63,702 nt of DNA, filler included, from Octopus bimaculoides (GCF_001194135.2; 5 parts of 4 records of this genome joined end to end with filler, not necessarily neighbours in it); one strand, 5' to 3'; shown: positions 51,846-62,997, counted from the whole stretch's first letter. Notes: a model not told the origin generated them from the sequence alone. Translations and numbers: made by a program.

Positions 51846-52899
51846 AGTGCATAAAGTCAACATTTATTTAGAACATGTACTAAATGTTATAAAATTCACG
51901 ATTGAATGTCACAGTGAAGAAAGTAAAAATCCAAGAAAATTCTGAAGGCAAGTGTATACAAAGAAATATGCTGTTATGAACGTTAATTTAAAACATATGC
52001 TGAAGGACGTACGTAGTAAGATATAATTTAACTGATGTTACTATAACATTTTAACTGTTTAACTTTATAAGCTATAGATTAAATACTGACCAACGCAGTA
52101 CAAAGTTTGTGCGACGTTGATAGACTGTTGAATGATTGGAGAAATACAGGGACTGTTAAAATAAACAACATTATCTTGAAACTTGTTAGAAGGAGTGGAA
52201 AAACATTTCCATAACTATATTGAAAGAGCCGCTGAGTCTTTCTGCTTCGCCATGTTTGTGAATTTATTATAATAACCAGAATAACATATTCCAGATAAAT
52301 AAGCGAGTATTGTGAGTGGCATTACATCAGCTAAATGTGCAATTTGGTAGTACTCGAAAGTGAACGTCGTTGTTCGTTTTAAGCCCAGGCCGCAATTAAG
52401 CTTTCAATATCGGCAGGTTTCACTCGTACGGGGGTAATGCATACATAATCTAACACACATACACATACATTAATGCACACCTGAACCCTATATCTGCTCA
52501 TGTGCATGTCTGTCACTGTCTTTAGATGTGTATGTGTTAGTCGTAACAAAAATGTATGTATACTGACAGACACATACACCGTCACGCACATATATTTGTC
52601 AGTCATCGGCCTAACGTAGGTAACGATCGCACGAACACACTCGTATAGAAAAGGTGAAACGTTGTGGTGGTGATATGAAATGTCATTTACGATAGGTGAC
52701 TAAAAGAAAAATGATAATGTTAGATTTCTCTAATGCAAATATGTGAACGAAAATATAGTTTAGTTGGTAGCAAAAAGCTTACTGAATCTTTTGATACCCA
52801 TACGTGAAAATCAGCAACTCATTTTTGGATTGCCTAAATTACATACGCACACGCATATACAAAAACTCTTATATATTTATGGATATATGTGCATATATG

Positions 52900-52975
<76 letters not shown>

Positions 52976-53277
52976 NNNNNNNNNNNNNNNNNNNNNNNNN
53001 NNNNNNNNNNNNNNNNNNNNNNNNNNNNNNNNNNNNNNNNNNNNNNNNNNNNNNNNNNNNNNNNNNNNNNNNNNNNNNNNNNNNNNNNNNNNNNNNNNNN
53101 NNNNNNNNNNNNNNNNNNNNNNNNNNNNNNNNNNNNNNNNNNNNNNNNNNNNNNNNNNNNNNNNNNNNNNNNNNNNNNNNNNNNNNNNNNNNNNNNNNNN
53201 NNNNNNNNNNNNNNNNNNNNNNNNNNNNNNNNNNNNNNNNNNNNNNNNNNNNNNNNNNNNNNNNNNNNNNNNNNNNN

Positions 53278-53309
<32 letters not shown>

Positions 53310-54231
53310 AGAGAGAGAGAGAGAGAGAGATATGCTATCATTCATCTTATGCTGAATACAGTATTACTTTAAATTTTAATTTGAATTATCTTCCAGTAAG
53401 CATTAAGAATAATTCTTCTAAAAATAGGAAAAACAAAAAAACACAAGAGAAATGTGGGCAAACTATTTTGATATGACATGGCTAGACTATAGAAATAAGC
53501 TTGTAATGTAAGCTGCTGATCTTGGTAAGTATTTTTTTAGACTGTACAACTAATAACATTTCATTTAGGGAACATTCTATACCGTTCAATATTGAATGTA
53601 TATGTAGTGCTGTTAGAACAAGAAAATGTCATTATTTTGGAAGACATTGAGAAACTGGTTATCCCAGAATAAGTATAGTGATTTTTTGACACATTTATGT
53701 GGCTTCGCATGTGGACTTTTAATTTGCAAAACAACAACGTATAGGTAGTTATGCCAGCAGTCAATATCGTATACATATGTATTAACGATCAATTTCAATA
53801 GAAACCCCTAAATATAATACATATAATTGCAATTCTATATAAGTTGTATTCTGTAGTTTTCGCTTATGTTTAAATTAGAAAAGAATTCACAGATTACATT
53901 TGCCATCACCTACAAAAGTACATACAGAAGCATACACACACTCTTATATATAATCAGAACTATATATGTGTATTTGTACATATATATACATTGCGGTGAC
54001 ATCCATCTCATTCAACGTACAGTGAAGTCGGTCTCTATTATTATATAAATGGATCCCCGTTGATAAAATCTCACGCTATTGGAGATACGGCTGGGTTTTG
54101 ACTAATGCTTCATGTATATAGAGAACTGACAGGTTTGCACCTGATGTCTTTTTATGTTAATTTCTATGTTCTTTATTTTAACTTGTATTATGTTATACGA
54201 GTTTTATTATGTATGTATATTTATGATCAGT

Positions 54232-54609
54232 GAAGGCGCAATGGCCCAGTGGTTAGGACAGCGGACTCGCGGTTATAGGATCGCGGTTTCGATTCCCAGA
54301 CCGGGCGTTGTGAGTGTTTATTGAGCGAAAACACCTAAAGCCCCACGAGGCTCCGACAGGGGATTGTGGCGAACCCTGCTGTACTCTTTTACCACAACTT
54401 TCTCTCACTCTTACTTCTTGTTTCTCTTGTGCCTGTAATTCAAAGGGTCAGCCTTGTCACACTGTGTTACGTTCAATATCCCCGAGAACTACGTTAAGGG
54501 TACACGTGTCTCTGGCGTGCTCAGCCTCTTGCACCTTAATTTCACGAGCAGGCTGTTCCGTTGATCGGATCAACACTTGACGTCGTAAGCGACGGAGTGC
54601 CAACAACAA
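54232..54609 (+). mobile_element. SINE family C (tRNA-derived head, (CAA)n tail)
   Basis: A box TGGCCCAGTGGTTAGG, B box GGTTTCGATTCCC; TSD-like ATTTATG(A/C)TCA at 54219-54229 and 54609-54619. Confidence 0.9.
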
Positions 54610-54850: not shown

Positions 54851-56950
54851 CTAAAGCTAATTGTTCTTTGACTATGTGTTTGCTTAACTTTTGTTTTAAG
54901 TATCATCTTACATATCTTAGAAGGTTGCTTAAGAAGTGTTATATCATGGAAATTTTGAAGTGAAAAATCGACTTACATTTCTGATGAGATTAGTGATGAA
55001 CATTCGCAATTCTTTTCAATGAAGTTTCTGCTGTAACACAAGCTTGAACACGCAATTATTTCTCTTGTACTGTGTCAGGTATTGATCGTAGGAATATGTA
55101 CATAGTCGCGATCAAATTTGTTATATATTTTGTGAATTGTCTACATCAAACAATATTAAAACTTATTTATCACCCAAGCCACTCCAAATATGCATGATCC
55201 GACAAGTGACAATTCAATGGAACATAACAGTGCTAATTAATTCATAGGAATCTAAAATTTCAGATTATAGAATTAATAGAATTTTGTAAGTAAAATCATT
55301 GTTAACAATATAAAATAAAGAGAGTTAATTCGTTATAGAAATTTTCAACAGCCTAGTAATATCAATATTCCAACTTAGAGAATATGAAATGTTTCGATAA
55401 AATTCAAACGCGGAATTGAAAACATTCCAATTTCAAATCACGCAAAGGACCCTGAAAGAATGTGTAGAAACGTTTTCTTTAAAGTTTTGTTGATTAAGCA
55501 AGAAATTTTACCTCATATCTCTTGTAAGATTTGTGAATGCTAATGTCATTCAAGATTATATTGTTTTTTGGGGCACGGAATTGTTTTATGCAGGCAAATA
55601 ATTGAATATATTTAATATATTATCCACAAATTTGTACATGTATGCCTTGCTTCTCAATTTGGTAATATTTTCTGCGAGCTTACCAAAATGTATTCACTTC
55701 GAATATCTCAGGATACATGAAATTTGGCTAATCGATCATTTTGTCATATTTGAGAGATTTCTATGACCTTGAAGATTCTTATGCGCTGTATGCATTCACA
55801 TATATTTACTCATTAAAAGAAATGCTTTCTAGATAAATACATAAATGCATCTCACTCGAATGATGTTCATGGGTGGTAACTCACATAATACTTCTCAAGA
55901 GTATCATTATTGATGCCATAACGACTAGGTTCATATTTTGCAATTTTAGTGAGTGTGAAACGTGATGTAAAAAAGACATCGAAGTTTTCGTTTTCTTGCA
56001 TATTTGTAAAAATATTGAAGAGATTTGCCTGAAGGGAATCACACATTATTGTCATATGCTTTTATGACCTTAACAGTTTGGATAATGCAGAATTATATTC
56101 TGCTGGTCTTGAAATCACTTTCGCATGCATGGTTTCTTCTTCATATACAGTGGATAATCACTGATCTGCCTCCCACAGAGAAAAGAGTAAGCATTGACAT
56201 ATGTTTGCGCAATTATTACCTTCCATCCAAAACTATTTTCTATTCTGAAATCGACATGGACAGTAATCAGTGTGTTTCACACTCTGATGTTGAGCGGAAT
56301 TGGTGATGTTATCTATGTTCTAGCTGGAAGAATATGATCAATTTCCTTTCTGCGTATTATATCTTTTAAACAAAGCAGTAGTTTAGTATAGTTATATTTA
56401 GATGTTGAATTTTGTAGAACGCACCGAACAGGAAATGTTGTGGCGTTAACCTGGAGGCATATCGAAACTTCTTTAATTCTCATTTCGATTGAATGCTGAG
56501 GGGCTTATTGGTGGATCAATGACACTGATAATAGCATACTGAATGCTATGTATGCCTATGTATGCTGTCCTTCTAAGTCAAGTGGTAGAAAAACGACCGG
56601 TTGTATAACAATTGCTTAATTTACATCATATTGGGTTAATATACTTTACTTATACAACGTGCATATTTGATGGATGTTTTTCCTTGAATGTAATTTGTAC
56701 TGGCTCGACGTTGGTGAATGAAGTCCGTAAGTAGTTATTGATATTATAGCGAAAATTATACTTGCGTCGGATATCATCTAAGCATATAGGCATAGAAATT
56801 ATTTTCACAAAATACATCCGATAAATTTAAATATTGATTAGATTGATATAATATTAAATATTGATTAGATTAACCGATAAGTTTCTAACATTCAGACGAA
56901 AGATTTATCGGATTTCCCTAAAGAATTCCTCACCTACAATTGGAATGCAA

Positions 56951-57879
56951 ATTCCTCCAACTGCAACCGCCAAGGACAACCTTGACCTTGCTCTTGGTAT
57001 GATAATGCAAGATCGCCGAATATCATGTCATCAGATAGCCGAGAGACTTGGCATCTCAATTGAAAGATCAGAAAACATTGAGACAAAAAAACTTGGGTTC
57101 TCAAACGTTTCCGTAAGGTGGTTCCCTCGCCTTTTGACTCCTGAACAGAAGCGCACTACGTGCACTGTGTCCACGAGCAATCTGAAACTGTTTGAAGCCT
57201 ATGAAGATATTATCTTGCTCATTTCATTTCTATGGACGAAAGTTGGGTTCATCGCTACCAGCCTGAGACCAAAGAATAATCAAAGCATTGGAAGCACAGA
57301 TCTTCTCATACCCCAAAATAGGCCAGGGTCATTCGTTCAGCTGGTAAGGTCATGGCGTCCGTTGTTTTTTTTTTTATTCTCAAGGTGTCTTGCTGCTCGA
57401 TTACCTTGAAAAGTGTCACACCGTTACGGGGCTGTTATTATCAGCTACTGAAACACCTCCGAGAAGCAATGAAAGAAAAAAGGCCGGGAATGCTTACCAG
57501 ATGAGTCCCTTTTCATCACGACAATGCTCCAGCCCACACTTCAGTCGTTGCCATGGCAACAATTCGTGATTCTGCATACGAACATGTTCTCCATCTGCCT
57601 TATTCTCCAGACTTAGCCCCCTCTGCCTTTTATCTACTCCCCAAAAAGAAAACGGGCCTGGCTAGTGGCCATTTTGCCAGTGGCAATGACGTCATAGACG
57701 CTGTAGGAAGTTTCTTCGAATCTCAAACAAAAGATGTTTTTCTACGCCGGGATAATGGCGCTTCAACACCGCTGGAGAAAGTGTTCAGCCATTGAGGGGG
57801 ACTATGTTGAAAAATAAATCATCAGAAGTTTTGAACCATGTTTTGTTTTTGAGACTCACAAGCTTTCATACACCTCTCG
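56951..57879 (+). pseudogene. 5'-truncated mariner transposase, same family as 30771-31941
   Basis: AKDNLDLALGMIMQDRRISC, HDNAPAHTSVVAMATI, YSPDLAPSAF, EGDYVEK; right TIR then TA. Confidence 0.9.
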
Positions 57880-58237
57880 TATTATGAAATGTTAGCGCCA
57901 AGCAGTGTTTAGGCATAATCAAAATGTAGGTTAGTTAAAATGTTTGTGACATAGTTCAACTGCTAAAAGGCAAATTCAGTGCGGTTAGTTCAATGACAAC
58001 ATGTATCAGGAATGCCAGCCTTCGATGTTTCGAGTTGTTTGATTCTTATAATTGGGATGTATCTAAGAGAGGCAAATCTGGACAAACTTATAAAGAAATA
58101 GTTTTATGTAAAATTCAGTCTACAACGTTGACTGATTTGTGCTGGTGGGCCACACATACATGCAGGCGTATGTATTTACATGCATAAATACATATACACA
58201 CTCATGCATACATGTTCATGCATACATACATATTCAC

Positions 58238-58392
58238 CATATTCTTCCCGTCGGGGTTAATACCAAAATGTGTTAATCCATGGTACGCTGGATCTTCAAG
58301 AATGTAATTGCGATTTGCTTTCCAGTTTTTATTCCAAGTGTGGTGTTCCCTCAGCACGGCATGCGATAAAATTGTTTCCCAGAATGTAGCGA
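58238..58392 (-). CDS. Candidate coding exon of an unidentified gene or pseudogene (155 bp, phase 1 to 0)
   Basis: Stop-free (V)ATFWETILSHAVLREHHTWNKNWKANRNYILEDPAYHGLTHFGINPDGKNM; donor ATG|GTGAAT; removing the adjacent SINE restores branch site TACTGAC and acceptor TTTTTCAG. Confidence 0.45.
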
Positions 58393-58395
58393 CTG

Positions 58396-58654
58396 GCAGA
58401 ATAATTAGCACGCTGGACAAAATGCTTAGCGTTATTTCGTCTGCCGCTACGTACTGAGTTCAAATTCCGCCGAGGTCGACTTTGTCTTTCATCCTTTCGA
58501 GGTCGATTAAATAAGTACCAGTCACGNNNNNNNNNNTCCTTTCGAGGTCGATTAAATAAGTACCAGTCACGCACTGGGGTCGATATAATCGACTTAATCC
58601 GTTTGTTTGTCCCCTCTGTGTGTAGCCCCGTGTGGGTAGTAAAGAAATAAGAAA
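58396..58654 (+). mobile_element. SINE family B (short head truncation) with 10-bp TSD GTAGCGACTG
   Basis: TSD at 58386-58395 and 58655-58664; GAGTTCAAATTCCGCCGAGGTCGAC body. Confidence 0.9.
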
Positions 58655-60316
58655 GTAGCGACTGAAAAACATCGATTGTCAGTAAGTGCAATGACTTGCC
58701 TCAAGATATTGTTAGTGTTTAAAACATGGCAACAGATGTCCAAATCTCCACATTAAAGGGCAATTATATCGCCTACATCATTTTTCTTATAGTTTCAATT
58801 CGGTCAAGATTTCTTGTTAAAACGTAAATCACAAATATTTAGCTCACATATCCCACCACGTTAAAAGACAATAAACATTTCTATTTCTTGCACCATACTG
58901 GGAAATGTAAACAAACAGAATTCAGTCAGCATTTTATCAGTTTTTGCAGCATTTCGTCTCGTTTGATGTACTATGGTTGTCATTTATAATCCGTAGCGTA
59001 TTGTAAAAATAATGGCAATTCTCTTAGCGCATATCCAACACATACAATCTCCGCTTTTAATTAAATGTAACTTAGCGTTCTTAGCATATCAGCAGCGATT
59101 CCATGACATTATCGTTTTCTATTATACTAACATTAACATCACAGAGCTCTACTATAATATCTTTTATTAATGAATTACTTTAAATTTTAGCTTCAAAGCA
59201 AATGTTCTGACAATGATATGCATATAGTGGGGAAAATGATATTAAGAAATGGTTATGGTTGCTAAAAAAAAATAATAACACAGATACTGAAATGTAAATA
59301 TATTATGGATATATCTAGAGAGATGGGAGAGAGAGAAAGAGAGGGGAAAGTTGATATCTATTTAGTTATCTATGTATTTGTGACTCAGTAAACGTCTAAA
59401 TTTATATGAACGCATTTCTGAAGAAAAAAGAGTAAACAGTACTTATGGTCTATTTCTTTCAACGCGGTTAGTAATTTACACACCCGTGCGCACACATACA
59501 AACATGCGTGCACACATACACACATGTGTGCACACATACACACATGCGTGCACACATACACAAACACACACATACGTGCGTTCAAATATACACGCTTACA
59601 CTAGGTATATGTCATTTTTGTTACGAGTATGAATTTATATGAGTGACTTATATGTTCGTCGGAACTTGAATCAAGTGTTTTGTCCTTGATAGTCCTCCTC
59701 TCTGAAAATCTATCACACTCCGCTCTCACACAATTTTAGAATTTAACTTCATTCGCCATCTATTCAGGTCTAATAGCCTGACGGTACTTATTTACAAACG
59801 GCTGCATATAATGTCCTGCAAACCAGCTTACATTGTATTTTGAATAACTCTGTAAAAGTCAGTCTTTTGTGATGGGAAATAAATCCAGTTTGCTTATGCG
59901 ATAACAGGGGTCGGCTTTCTCATTCCCGTATATATTATAGGAAATACACAAAATACTATTATATATATATATAAATACGTAAGTATATATATATACACAC
60001 ACACATATATATATATANNNNNNNNNNNNNNNNNNNNNNNNNNNNNNNNNNNNNNNNNNNNNNNNNNNNNNNNNNNNNNNNNNNNNNNNNNNNNNNNNNN
60101 NNNNNNNNNNNNNNNNNNNNNNNNNNNNNNNNNNNNNNNNNNNNNNNNNNNNNNNNNNNNNNNNNNNNNNNNNNNNNNNNNNNNNNNNNNNNNNNNNNNN
60201 NNNNNNNNNNNNNNNNNNNNNNNNNNNNNNNNNNNNNNNNNNNNNNNNNNNNNNNNNNNNNNNNNNNNNNNNNNNNNNNNNNNNNNNNNNNNNNNNNNNN
60301 NNNNNNNNNNNNNNNN

Positions 60317-60355
<39 letters not shown>

Positions 60356-62431
60356 TGTATATATATATACATATTTATATATATATATATACATACATAT
60401 ATGTGTGTGTATATATCTCTGTATGTATGCATGTATATATATATATATATGTAAATATATTGTGTATATGACTGAGACATCCATACTATTTTTATTGTCT
60501 TAATCGTAATTATTGAATATGAGTAAAACGAATATAGATTTTTGTGTATAATATTTTTTTATGCAATTATTCGTGTACTGAATGACGTACTTGGAAATTT
60601 CTATCAGTTTATAATATTTTTAATAAAATAAACAAAACCACTGGTAACTATTGCCAATGCTTCACAATAAAATTTGGCGATAAAGAGACGGAGAACTTGA
60701 GAATTAAATTTCTAGAATATTGAATTTTTATGCTATGGATGGGGAAATGTTCCTTGTCAAGATGCATGACAGCAACGGACATAAATCTCACTTATTACAC
60801 ATCGTCGACCAAATTTTGGATTTTCAACTACTCAATCATTTGCCATTCTTATTTTGAATTATTTCTGATCAGATTATTTAAGTTTCCCCTTTCCTCTGGA
60901 TATAGATTATGCCTACTTAGAAAATAAATACTATGAGAATGATTGTATTACATCTTATTTATTTTGTTTTATCACGTATAAACATTGCTATTAACGACTT
61001 CTTTCTTCTCAATATTATGGACTAGTTATCCTTAGGGTTAGGTTTAGGGTAGACAATCACAATCTTTAACTTTAGTTTTTCTAAATAATTCTAAATTATT
61101 CTGCAGATAGTCAAGTAAGGAAATGTATAAATAAGTGCACTAACAATACAAAAGTAATATTCGACGTTTACACTTCTTAGATGTAACACTGTCTTCAATT
61201 ATGATAAATAATATCCGACGTGAATAAAATCTACAAGGTAAGAGTAAATAAAATGTGCTGGACTGAAACAGATTTATGTTATAATGGAGTCGTGAGAGTG
61301 TTATCAGCCTTCAGATACAGGAGAAACTTGATGAAATATTTTCTAACAATATACAGACAAATCATTTCCAGTTAGTGATCAACTTATGTAAATACTGAGA
61401 AATATAATATATATATATGATAAGAAAGTTGCAAAAGCAGAAAAATTCAATAATGTATCAATGCCCTTATGCTGGCTGTATGTGTGAATGTGTGCAAGAG
61501 TTATCTCCGCGTGCCTAAATATGTTTATATGTATATGTATATATATATATATNNNNNNNNNNNNNNNNNNNNNNNNNNNNNNNNNNNNNNNNNNNNNNNN
61601 NNNNNNNNNNNNNNNNNNNNNNNNNNNNNNNNNNNNNNNNNNNNNNNNNNNNNNNNNNNNNNNNNNNNNNNNNNNNNNNNNNNNNNNNNNNNNNNNNNNN
61701 NNNNNNNNNNNNNNNNNNNNNNNNNNNNNNNNNNNNNNNNNNNNNNNNNNNNNNNNNNNNNNNNNNNNNNNNNNNNNNNNNNNNNNNNNNNNNNNNNNNN
61801 NNNNNNNNNNNNNNNNNNNNNNNNNNNNNNNNNNNNNNNNNNNNNNNNNNNNNNNNNNNNNNNNNNNNNNNNNNNNNNNNNNNNNNNNNNNNNNCCGATC
61901 TTGTGTGTGTGTAACAGACATATAGCGGTAGTATTTCCATTATTGTTTTGTGAATATGGTTTACTCATTTTTAATAATCCTGTCACTGTTTACGTTACAG
62001 TTTTTTTGTAGATAGAATATTGTGTTTTCTAAGATTTGCATTGATCAGTATATTACATTAGTTACTCGCTGAGAAAACGACATCTTTAAATTTCATGGAT
62101 GACCGTTCTCCGGGAAATATCAGCGTAAAAGACTACAACACCCGCAAAATTTTTGAATTATCCTGGATTAAAAGTAGAAATTGTATTTTGCGTACATGTT
62201 AGTTCATGAGTCTTAGTCAAGAACTTACCTAATACCTAATTTATTCACAACCCACCAGCTTTTCGAGACATCATTTGCTCTATGGGCAGTGTTATATTAT
62301 ATCAGTTTGGCAGGTATTTTCGATCTAGCATCCTGCACATGACTACCACTGCTGATGATGTGAAATTAATGATGTAATCATGTGATACAATAACACCACG
62401 CGCTGGTGCTAAAGAAAATTTTGGCAGCTGG

Positions 62432-62997
62432 TTTAATGCTTCGATAGTAGTCGGATACGTCTTTTCTCACATGATGGCCTATGATAATATTTTCATTTAC
62501 AATGTAAGTAAAATAGTCAAAACACCCAAGCACGCATATACACCTACAAATACAGAAACAAGAACAGACATAAACATACACAAACATATNNNNNNNNNNN
62601 NNNNNNNNNNNNNNNNNNNNNNNNNNNNNNNNNNNNNNNNNNNNNNNNNNNNNNNNNNNNNNNNNNNNNNNNNNNNNNNNNNNNNNNNNNNNNNNNNNNN
62701 NNNNNNNNNNNNNNNNNNNNNNNNNNNNNNNNNNNNNNNNNNNNNNNNNNNNNNNNNNNNNNNNNNNNNNNNNNNNNNNNNNNNNNNNNNNNNNNNNNNN
62801 NNNNNNNNNNNNNNNNNNNNNNNNNNNNTATATATATATATATGTTTGTGTGTGTGTATGTCTGTTCTTGTTTGTGTATTTGTAGGTGTGTGTGCGTGCT
62901 TGTGTGTTTTGACTATTTTACTTACATTATAAATGAAAATATTATCATAGGCCATCATGTGAGAAAAGACGTATCCGACTACTATCGAAGCATTAAA
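62432..62997. repeat. Inverted duplication with arms of about 158 bp around a gap
   Basis: 62432-62589 versus about 62839-62997: outer 67 bp identical, about 7 mismatches further in; TTAA at both outer ends. Confidence 0.85.

What the first reader, a model, noticed from the sequence alone, without database searches (positions are those of the whole stretch)
58232..58690. SINE insertion whose TSD duplicates a 3' splice site
Seen: on the minus strand the 10-bp TSD is CAG|TCGCTAC, the putative acceptor plus the first 7 exon bases. Removing the SINE rebuilds TACTGAC...TTTTTCAG followed by a 155-bp stop-free segment ending at GTGAAT. After insertion there are two acceptors. The distal original one would exonise the antisense SINE. 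The proximal copy is now preceded by SINE-derived TGCTAAT-TATTCTGC-CAG, a branch-point-like motif with a short pyrimidine stretch. Inference: the insertion either killed the exon, was spliced out harmlessly using SINE-donated signals, or created an alternative 3' splice choice.
Basis: partly seen in the sequence, partly recalled or inferred. Interest (0 to 1): 0.7.

Follow-up and report, generated by a model that had tools for sequence, protein, structure and literature searches.

The report
Ordinary octopus SINE copy, exon unsupported
This is one old copy of a very common octopus SINE retroposon with its target-site duplication; I found no evidence that it landed on a real exon or splice site, so it looks ordinary.

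Summary
A SINE lies on the + strand at 58396-58649. It is 89% identical to a consensus I built from copies in Octopus sinensis.

Two points need correcting.
- The direct repeat is 15 bp with one mismatch (58381-58395 and 58650-58664), not 10 bp.
- The copy lacks the first 12 nt of the full-length element.

The assembly gap (58527-58536) is an unmerged contig overlap. The 35 nt on each side are identical, and the collapsed sequence is collinear with the consensus. So 45 nt are spurious, and reading frames are unaffected.

The exon reading is not supported.
- The 52-aa peptide has no credible homologue. This holds even in a protein collection shown to contain O. sinensis proteins.
- Open frames of 52 or more codons occur 77 times in this 16-kb piece.
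- 33 AG...GT open pairs score at least as well on a rough splice matrix.
- The surroundings are transposon remnants and microsatellites.
- The "SINE-donated" branch/pyrimidine/CAG motif is built into the antisense 5' end of the SINE consensus.
- The CAG of the duplication lies where the target resembles the missing SINE head.

RNA evidence and the orthologous empty site could not be checked, so a lineage-specific exon is not excluded. I rate that unlikely.

The parts
58381..58395 (+). Upstream copy of the target-site duplication, AGAATGTAGCGACTG. On the minus strand it reads CAG|TCGCTACATTCT, the 'proximal acceptor'.
   Evidence: It matches 58650-58664 at 14 of 15 positions, and the last 10 nt are identical.
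58396..58526 (+). Left part of the SINE body. It starts at consensus position 13 (GCAGAA...), so the copy is 5'-truncated by 12 nt. It contains a B-box-like GAGTTCAAATTCC.
   Evidence: alignment to O. sinensis copies and consensus; blastn.
58527..58571 (.). Assembly artefact: 10 N plus a second copy of the 35-mer TCCTTTCGAGGTCGATTAAATAAGTACCAGTCACG, which also occurs at 58492-58526.
   Evidence: family D13, 100% identical. One search shows that the collapsed sequence is collinear with the consensus.
58572..58649 (+). Right part of the SINE body, ending in the family's 3' end ...GGGTAGTAAAGAAATA. It carries a 10-nt deletion relative to the O. sinensis copies.
58650..58664 (+). Downstream copy of the target-site duplication, AGAAAGTAGCGACTG. 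On the minus strand it reads CAG|TCGCTACTTTCT, the 'distal/original acceptor'.
58662..58685 (-). Acceptor-like motif of the pre-insertion DNA, TTACTGAC-N9-TTTTTCAG. Its matrix score is 4.5, in the top 8% of AG sites in the piece.
   Evidence: There is no RNA or homology support.
58238..58392 (-). It encodes ATFWETILSHAVLREHHTWNKNWKANRNYILEDPAYHGLTHFGINPDGKNM. I judge it a chance open frame.
   Evidence: translation; no credible homologue; background.
58232..58237 (-). Donor-like GTGAAT. Its matrix score is 5.4, in the top 6% of GT sites. It lies at the edge of a (TGTA/TGCA)n microsatellite at 58151-58232.

Best explanation
This is a single, old, slightly 5'-truncated copy of an abundant octopus SINE family. 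It was inserted by target-primed reverse transcription into non-coding, repeat-rich DNA and made a 15-bp target-site duplication.

The acceptor-like look of the duplication has two ordinary sources. First, the target's 3' end resembled the SINE's own 5' head (GGCGGCGAGCTG), which probably guided 5'-end joining by microhomology. Second, the antisense SINE head carries a branch-like TGCTAAC, a short pyrimidine run and a CAG by family consensus.

The 155-nt open frame beside it is a chance open frame. No splicing function is implied.

Shown: the SINE identity, the duplication, the truncation, the gap artefact, the lack of homologues and the decoy background.
Inferred: the insertion mechanism, the microhomology and the absence of transcription or splicing.
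For: SINE identity.
- More than 10 full-length copies of the same element lie in about 130 kb of Octopus sinensis DNA.
- The window copy is 88.8% identical to, and collinear with, their consensus.
- Other copies carry 15-20 bp duplications directly after ...AAAGAAATA. The window fits this with a 15-bp, 14/15 duplication.

Organism and database control.
- The mariner-like ORF at 56861-57409 hits O. sinensis RefSeq proteins at 58-76% identity.

No exon.
- Pfam gave no family.
- No protein in 5.8 billion clusters shares enough words with the peptide.
- Exhaustive phmmer against 1.84 billion representatives returned only three repeat proteins: a tandem-repeat protein, a protein with WD40-like repeats, and one of unknown type. 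They do not resemble one another. Their scores come from summing 22-26-bit matches to each repeat unit.
- PDB gave E > 0.5. tblastn against the fetched octopus loci found nothing.
- 77 open frames reach 52 or more codons, and 33 AG..GT open pairs are equally good or better.
- No Pfam domain is found in any open segment of 45 or more codons on the minus strand.
- Nearby are a mariner at 56954-57882, another repeat at 54229-54600, and a microsatellite at 58151-58232.

Motif origin.
- The antisense consensus ends gcgtgctaacgtttctgccag|CTCGCCGCC and scores 5.15. The 'original' acceptor scores 4.48 and the proximal one 2.82.
- The duplication matches the missing head at 8 of 12 positions with one gap. 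Only 0.4% of 15-mers in the piece do as well.
Against: - No RNA-seq, annotation or orthologous locus of this species could be consulted. A lineage-specific or unannotated exon, coding or non-coding, cannot be excluded.
- The pre-insertion site does have a tidy TTACTGAC, 17 nt from the branch A to the G of the AG.
- The stop-to-stop open frame is 92 codons. About 3 of that length are expected per shuffled piece.
- One weak resemblance to a WD40-like repeat (W..x..IL.DP..G....SPDG, 26 bits) is suggestive but far below significance for one stretch.
- Only O. sinensis was shown to be in the protein collection. The window's own species is not known.
Confidence: 0.85

Rival explanations
1. The 155-nt segment is a real coding exon of an unannotated octopus gene on the minus strand. 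The SINE inserted exactly at its 3' splice site and duplicated the acceptor. Splicing now uses the proximal copy with SINE-derived branch and pyrimidine signals, or alternates between the two.
For: The motifs and the open frame exist. The proximal acceptor keeps the frame intact. The antisense SINE head supplies TGCTAAT plus a pyrimidine run.
Against: - There is no homologue in any collection, including one holding O. sinensis proteins.
- The motifs and the frame are no better than 33 decoys in 14.6 kb.
- The open frame is not bounded by the motifs.
- The proximal acceptor scores only 2.8.
- Use of the distal acceptor gives a frameshift and a stop after 21 codons.
- No other exon-like, domain-bearing ORF lies on the minus strand of the piece.
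Confidence: 0.06
2. The locus is transcribed as part of a non-coding RNA or a UTR. The antisense SINE contributes a usable 3' splice site, as antisense Alu does in primates, without any protein-coding exon being involved.
For: The antisense consensus carries a built-in acceptor-like motif with a score of 5.15. The antisense A-rich tail gives a pyrimidine run, TTTCTTATTTCTTTACTACCC. According to PMC13282606, SINEs make up about 11.6% of the O. vulgaris genome, so many such latent sites exist.
Against: There is no transcript evidence of any kind here. A translated antisense-SINE frame found no annotated protein. This would be a family-wide property and nothing special to this copy.
Confidence: 0.07
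3. The flanking repeat is not a target-site duplication. The upstream copy is the SINE's own diverged 5' head, and the downstream copy is the start of a second, tandem unit. Tandem arrays of this SINE exist in O. sinensis.
For: The upstream copy resembles the head GGCGGCGAGCTG at 8 of 12 positions. Tandem arrays of SINE sub-units occur at L002 21463-22236 and L007 22237-23006.
Against: - In those arrays the repeated unit starts at consensus position 48, not at the head.
- The sequence after 58664 (AAAAACATCGATTG...) does not continue as SINE.
- The two copies agree with each other at 14 of 15 positions, including AGAA, which is not head sequence.
- The repeat sits exactly where other copies have their duplications.
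Confidence: 0.02

Closest known systems
The same SINE family in Octopus sinensis (GCA_006345805.1; copies in loci L002, L007 and L008). It is probably among the 'unclassified SINEs' that make up most octopus SINE content (PMC13282606).
   Same: 89% identity to a 235-nt consensus over the whole length. It has the same 3' end...GTAAAGAAATA. It has the same kind of AT-rich-starting 15-20 bp duplication.
   Different: The window copy lacks head positions 1-12 and has a 10-nt internal deletion. It comes from an unidentified octopod.
Octopus tRNA-derived SINEs OK, OR1 and OR2 (Ohshima & Okada 1994, as cited in PMC4824008 and PMC4758252), and the CORE-SINE superfamily
   Same: Same host group, short size, a B-box-like GTTCAAATTCC, and retroposon-type duplications.
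   Different: ARAGORN and Rfam call no tRNA in the head.
Antisense Alu exonisation in primates (from my own knowledge: Sorek 2002; Lev-Maor 2003)
   Same: An antisense SINE offers a pyrimidine run followed by AG that could serve as a 3' splice site.
   Different: Here the motif lies at the antisense end of the SINE head and not only in the tail. No transcript evidence exists, and no exonised copy was found among annotated proteins.
Microhomology at the 5' junctions of truncated L1/Alu insertions (from my own knowledge: Zingler et al. 2005)
   Same: In two 5'-truncated copies, the window's and L002:5667, the end of the duplication resembles the missing SINE head.
   Different: The similarity is longer and imperfect (8/12 and 6/8), not the 1-5 nt exact matches typical of L1. 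There are only two cases.

Membership tests
SINE (non-autonomous non-LTR retroposon) | Short (about 100-500 bp) dispersed repeat with many diverged copies in the genome | tested here: met
   The collapsed copy is 209 nt. More than 10 full-length copies and many partial or related ones lie in about 130 kb of O. sinensis DNA, at 73-97% identity to the consensus.
SINE (non-autonomous non-LTR retroposon) | Flanking target-site duplication of variable sequence | tested here: met
   The window has a 15-bp duplication matching at 14 of 15 positions. Four other copies have different duplications of 15-20 bp.
SINE (non-autonomous non-LTR retroposon) | Internal RNA polymerase III promoter (A and B boxes) in a head derived from tRNA, 5S or 7SL RNA | tested here: inconclusive
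   A B-box-like GAGTTCAAATTCC is present. A-box candidates match only 6 of 9 specified positions, judged by eye. ARAGORN and Rfam find no tRNA in the window copy or in the O. sinensis consensus or copy.
SINE (non-autonomous non-LTR retroposon) | 3' tail shared with a partner LINE, or an A-rich or simple-repeat tail | tested here: inconclusive
   The A-rich end GTAAAGAAATA is conserved among copies. No partner LINE was sought.
CORE-SINE superfamily | Conserved central CORE domain of about 60 nt | tested here: not met
Only the B box aligned. This is a rough test because the reference came from memory.
Functional 3' splice site / coding exon | AG preceded by a pyrimidine tract and a branch point, and scoring above the genomic background | tested here: not met
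   The motifs are present, but 124 AG sites in the piece score at least as well as the distal site (4.5). The proximal site scores 2.8. The matrix is approximate.
Functional 3' splice site / coding exon | The encoded peptide has homologues or is conserved in related genomes | tested here: not met
   Searches found no credible homologue. The database control for O. sinensis is. The orthologous locus itself could not be fetched.
Functional 3' splice site / coding exon | Spliced transcripts across the junctions | not testable with these tools
   No RNA-seq or cephalopod transcript resource was available.

The most novel reading that the evidence does not exclude
The 155-nt segment is a genuine exon of a lineage-specific, unannotated octopus gene. 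This SINE family, through the acceptor-like motif built into its antisense head, has replaced or doubled the exon's 3' splice site. That would be an invertebrate counterpart of Alu-driven splice-site turnover, with the target chosen by microhomology to the SINE head.
Probability: 0.05. Interest if true: 0.4.

Novelty: already known. Interest (0 to 1): 0.1.

Why it matters
As it stands this is routine repeat annotation. It is one of the very many copies of a SINE family that fills a sizeable part of octopus genomes.

There are three modest practical points.
1. The gap at 58527-58536 is a false gap with a duplicated 35-mer. Coordinates and any frame drawn across it should be read with 45 nt removed.
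2. Splice-like motifs next to antisense copies of this SINE are expected from the consensus. They should not be taken as evidence of exons.
3. If junction reads were ever found, the family-wide antisense acceptor motif would be worth a genome-wide look at SINE exonisation in cephalopods.

Tried and rejected
- ARAGORN on the piece and on the consensus, and Rfam on the piece, the SINE head and an O. sinensis copy, found no tRNA. The Rfam mir-297/mir-3149 matches are TG/TA microsatellites, all below their gathering scores.
- An exact 23-mer of the SINE is absent from the metagenome, prokaryote-genome and viral collections, as expected for animal DNA.
- Exact-product look-ups of three window ORFs found no record. 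The window's own assembly or an orthologous locus could therefore not be fetched.
- The translated antisense-SINE frame found no annotated protein.
- The three phmmer hits were rejected as repeat-summation artefacts.
It was redone with open segments joined by X.
- PDB searches of the mariner ORF and of the 92-aa open frame found nothing.
- The ENA loci L001, L003 and L004 carry the mariner but not the SINE, so they gave no SINE copies.
- The CORE-SINE idea, which I had from memory, did not survive an alignment test.
- Albertin 2015 (PMC4795812) is not held in the library.
- A literature search for octopus SINE exonisation found nothing specific.

Full report
**What is in the sequence**

On the + strand, GTAGCGACTG occurs exactly twice in the window, at 58386-58395 and 58655-58664. 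Between the two lies a 259-nt insert that includes the 10-N gap. Removing one repeat and the insert rebuilds, on the minus strand, cTTACTGACaatcgatgtttttCAG|TCGCTACATTCTGGG... This is followed by a 155-nt segment (58392 down to 58238), open in one frame only, ending ATG|GTGAAT. It encodes ATFWETILSHAVLREHHTWNKNWKANRNYILEDPAYHGLTHFGINPDGKNM. The proximal CAG is preceded by TGCTAATTATTCTGC from the insert.

**The gap, tested first**

The 35 nt left of the gap (58492-58526) and the 35 nt right of it (58537-58571) are identical (family D13). That is the signature of two contig ends that overlap but were not merged. I removed the 10 N and one 35-mer and aligned the result to other copies of the element from Octopus sinensis. 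The collapsed sequence runs collinear with them straight through the junction...CCAGTCACG|CACTGGGGTCG.... The gap therefore hides nothing, and 45 nt of the displayed sequence are spurious. Since 45 is a multiple of 3, frames drawn across the gap are not shifted.

**The insert is a SINE, and the organism is an octopus**

- A mariner-like ORF 1 kb away (56861-57409, + strand) hits Octopus sinensis RefSeq proteins at 58-76% identity. These proteins carry HTH_48 and Transposase_1.
- I fetched the DNA around those genes: loci L002 and L005-L008, about 130 kb of O. sinensis.
- These loci hold more than 10 full-length copies of the same element, plus partial and related ones.
- A consensus built from five full-length copies is 235 nt. 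It starts GGCGGCGAGCTGGCAGAAACGTTAGC and ends ...GGGTAGTAAAGAAATA, plus a few bases of ragged flank.
- The window copy is 88.8% identical to this consensus.
- Three ENA loci that share the mariner lack the SINE.
- The head has a B-box-like GAGTTCAAATTCC. ARAGORN and Rfam call no tRNA in it, so tRNA descent is not shown here.
- A CORE-domain resemblance I recalled did not survive an alignment test.
- Octopus SINEs are long known: OK, OR1 and OR2 of Ohshima & Okada 1994, cited in PMC4824008 and PMC4758252. SINEs are put at 11.6% of the O. vulgaris genome, mostly unclassified (PMC13282606).

**The duplication, corrected**

In four other copies the SINE ends at ...AAAGA(A/G)ATA or ...AAAGAAA and is followed at once by a 15-20 bp duplication. 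Examples are TATAATATCTACGCGACCTA, TATTTGGAATAGCAT and AAGGTATTTATTCGCTA. Read the same way, the window's SINE ends at 58649 (...GTAAAGAAATA). The duplication is then 15 bp with one mismatch: AGAATGTAGCGACTG at 58381-58395 and AGAAAGTAGCGACTG at 58650-58664. A 10-nt exact repeat between two 30-nt boundary windows is expected about 1e-3 times by chance, so the duplication is real.

The copy begins at consensus position 13, so the head GGCGGCGAGCTG is missing. The 3' end of the duplication (GTAGCGA-CTG) resembles that missing head at 8 of 12 positions with one gap. Only 0.4% of 15-mers in the piece do as well. Copy L002:5667 shows the same thing: the duplication GGTGTCGA stands in place of the head GGCGGCGA, and only 0.09% of 8-mers match as well. 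I read this as 5'-end joining helped by microhomology, as described for truncated L1/Alu insertions (my own knowledge). With two cases, this is an inference.

**Is there an exon?**

Homology:
- Pfam gives nothing, even at E = 10.
- The word-indexed search of 5.8 billion protein clusters finds no candidate. That collection holds O. sinensis proteins.
- Exhaustive phmmer against 1.84 billion representatives lists three proteins. All three are long repeat proteins that do not resemble one another. One is an 111-aa tandem repeat, one has WD40-like repeats, and one is unknown.
- Each single match is only 22-26 bits. The reported E-values come from adding the same weak match over 7-13 repeat units. 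They cannot all be homologues, and none is credible alone.
- PDB gives E > 0.5. tblastn against the fetched octopus loci gives nothing.

Statistics:
- The piece has 77 open frames of 52 or more codons, against about 47 in Markov shuffles. It has 11 of 92 or more codons, against about 3.4 in shuffles.
The distal acceptor scores 4.5; 124 AG sites are as good or better. The donor scores 5.4; 97 GT sites are as good or better.
- 33 AG..GT pairs of 50-300 nt with an open frame are as good or better on both sites, within 14.6 kb.
- The open frame continues 40 codons upstream of the 'acceptor' and 11 codons past the 'donor'.
- The 'donor' sits at the edge of a (TGTA/TGCA)n microsatellite.

Context:
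- No open segment of 45 or more codons on the minus strand has a Pfam domain. On the + strand only the decayed mariner gives a weak hit.
- The piece also carries another dispersed repeat at 54229-54600 and many microsatellites and gaps.

**Where the splice-like motif comes from**

The antisense consensus of the SINE ends gcgtgctaacgtttctgccag|CTCGCCGCC. It has a branch-like TGCTAAC, a short pyrimidine run and a CAG, and scores 5.15. That is better than the 'original' acceptor at 4.48 and the proximal one at 2.82. The 'SINE-donated signals' are thus a property of every antisense copy. The CAG inside the duplication lies in the stretch where the target resembled the SINE head.

If the distal AG were used, the collapsed insert would add 224 nt (224 mod 3 = 2). 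In the incoming phase the reading would stop after 21 codons, at ATFLFLYYPHGATHRGDKQTD*. A different antisense frame is open through the whole SINE, but it joins the exon out of frame.

**Verdict**

This is an ordinary, fairly old SINE copy with its target-site duplication, lying in repeat-rich non-coding DNA beside a chance open frame. I put about 85% on this. I leave about 6% for a real coding exon and about 7% for some non-coding splicing use of the antisense SINE. Neither can be excluded without RNA-seq or the orthologous locus, and neither of those could be reached with the tools here. Nothing about the locus is new in kind.

Noticed in passing
window 56954-57882 (+); ORFs 56861-57409 and 57553-57795: A decayed mariner-type transposon, broken into at least two frames. 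The ORFs contain RWFPRLLTPEQK and LPYSPDLAPS. It is 80% identical over 941 nt to an O. sinensis copy (L005), and the protein hits O. sinensis 'GVQW3-like' proteins carrying HTH_48 and Transposase_1. It lies about 350 bp from the putative exon.
   Followed up: partly
window 54229-54600: Another dispersed repeat of about 370 nt, with 4-5 copies in L002 at 80-88% identity. It is unclassified and overlaps the ORF at 54314-54580. A shorter repeat at 48167-48324 matches L005.
   Followed up: no
window 58381-58395, and L002 5667-5674: In two 5'-truncated SINE copies, the end of the target-site duplication resembles the missing SINE head GGCGGCGAGCTG: 8/12 matches (0.4% of 15-mers do as well) and 6/8 matches (0.09% of 8-mers). 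This suggests microhomology-guided 5'-end joining in this family.
   Followed up: partly
antisense strand of the SINE consensus; window 58393-58412 (-): Every antisense copy of this SINE ends in gtgctaacgtttctgccag|CTCGCC, a latent 3' splice-site-like motif with a matrix score of 5.15. The antisense tail gives a further pyrimidine run. Whether any copy is used as an acceptor in octopus transcripts is untested.
   Followed up: partly
L002 21463-22236; L002 19063-19460; L007 22237-23006: In O. sinensis the SINE also forms short head-to-tail arrays. In these, a full copy is followed by 1-3 units that start at consensus position 48. The result is satellite-like amplification of a SINE sub-unit.
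   Followed up: no
window 58151-58232, 52849-53372, 59940-60480, 61500-61900, 62540-62900: TG/TA/CA-type microsatellites flank most of the assembly gaps. They also produce spurious sub-threshold Rfam 'mir-297/mir-3149/mir-466' matches.
   Followed up: yes
loci L001, L003 and L004 (ENA assemblies ERZ25068511, ERZ22157276 and ERZ25067582): Contigs filed in ENA assemblies carry the same mariner family at 76-79% nucleotide identity but none of the octopus SINE. They presumably come from other molluscs or cephalopods. The organisms were not identified.
   Followed up: no
peptide from window 58238-58393 (-): The peptide's second half (WNKNWKANRNYILEDPAYHGLTHFGINPDGKNM) loosely follows the pattern W..x..IL.DP..G....SPDG seen in each repeat of the WD40-like hit P0002 (26 bits). 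This is far below significance. I record it only so that it is not rediscovered as a hit.
   Followed up: yes
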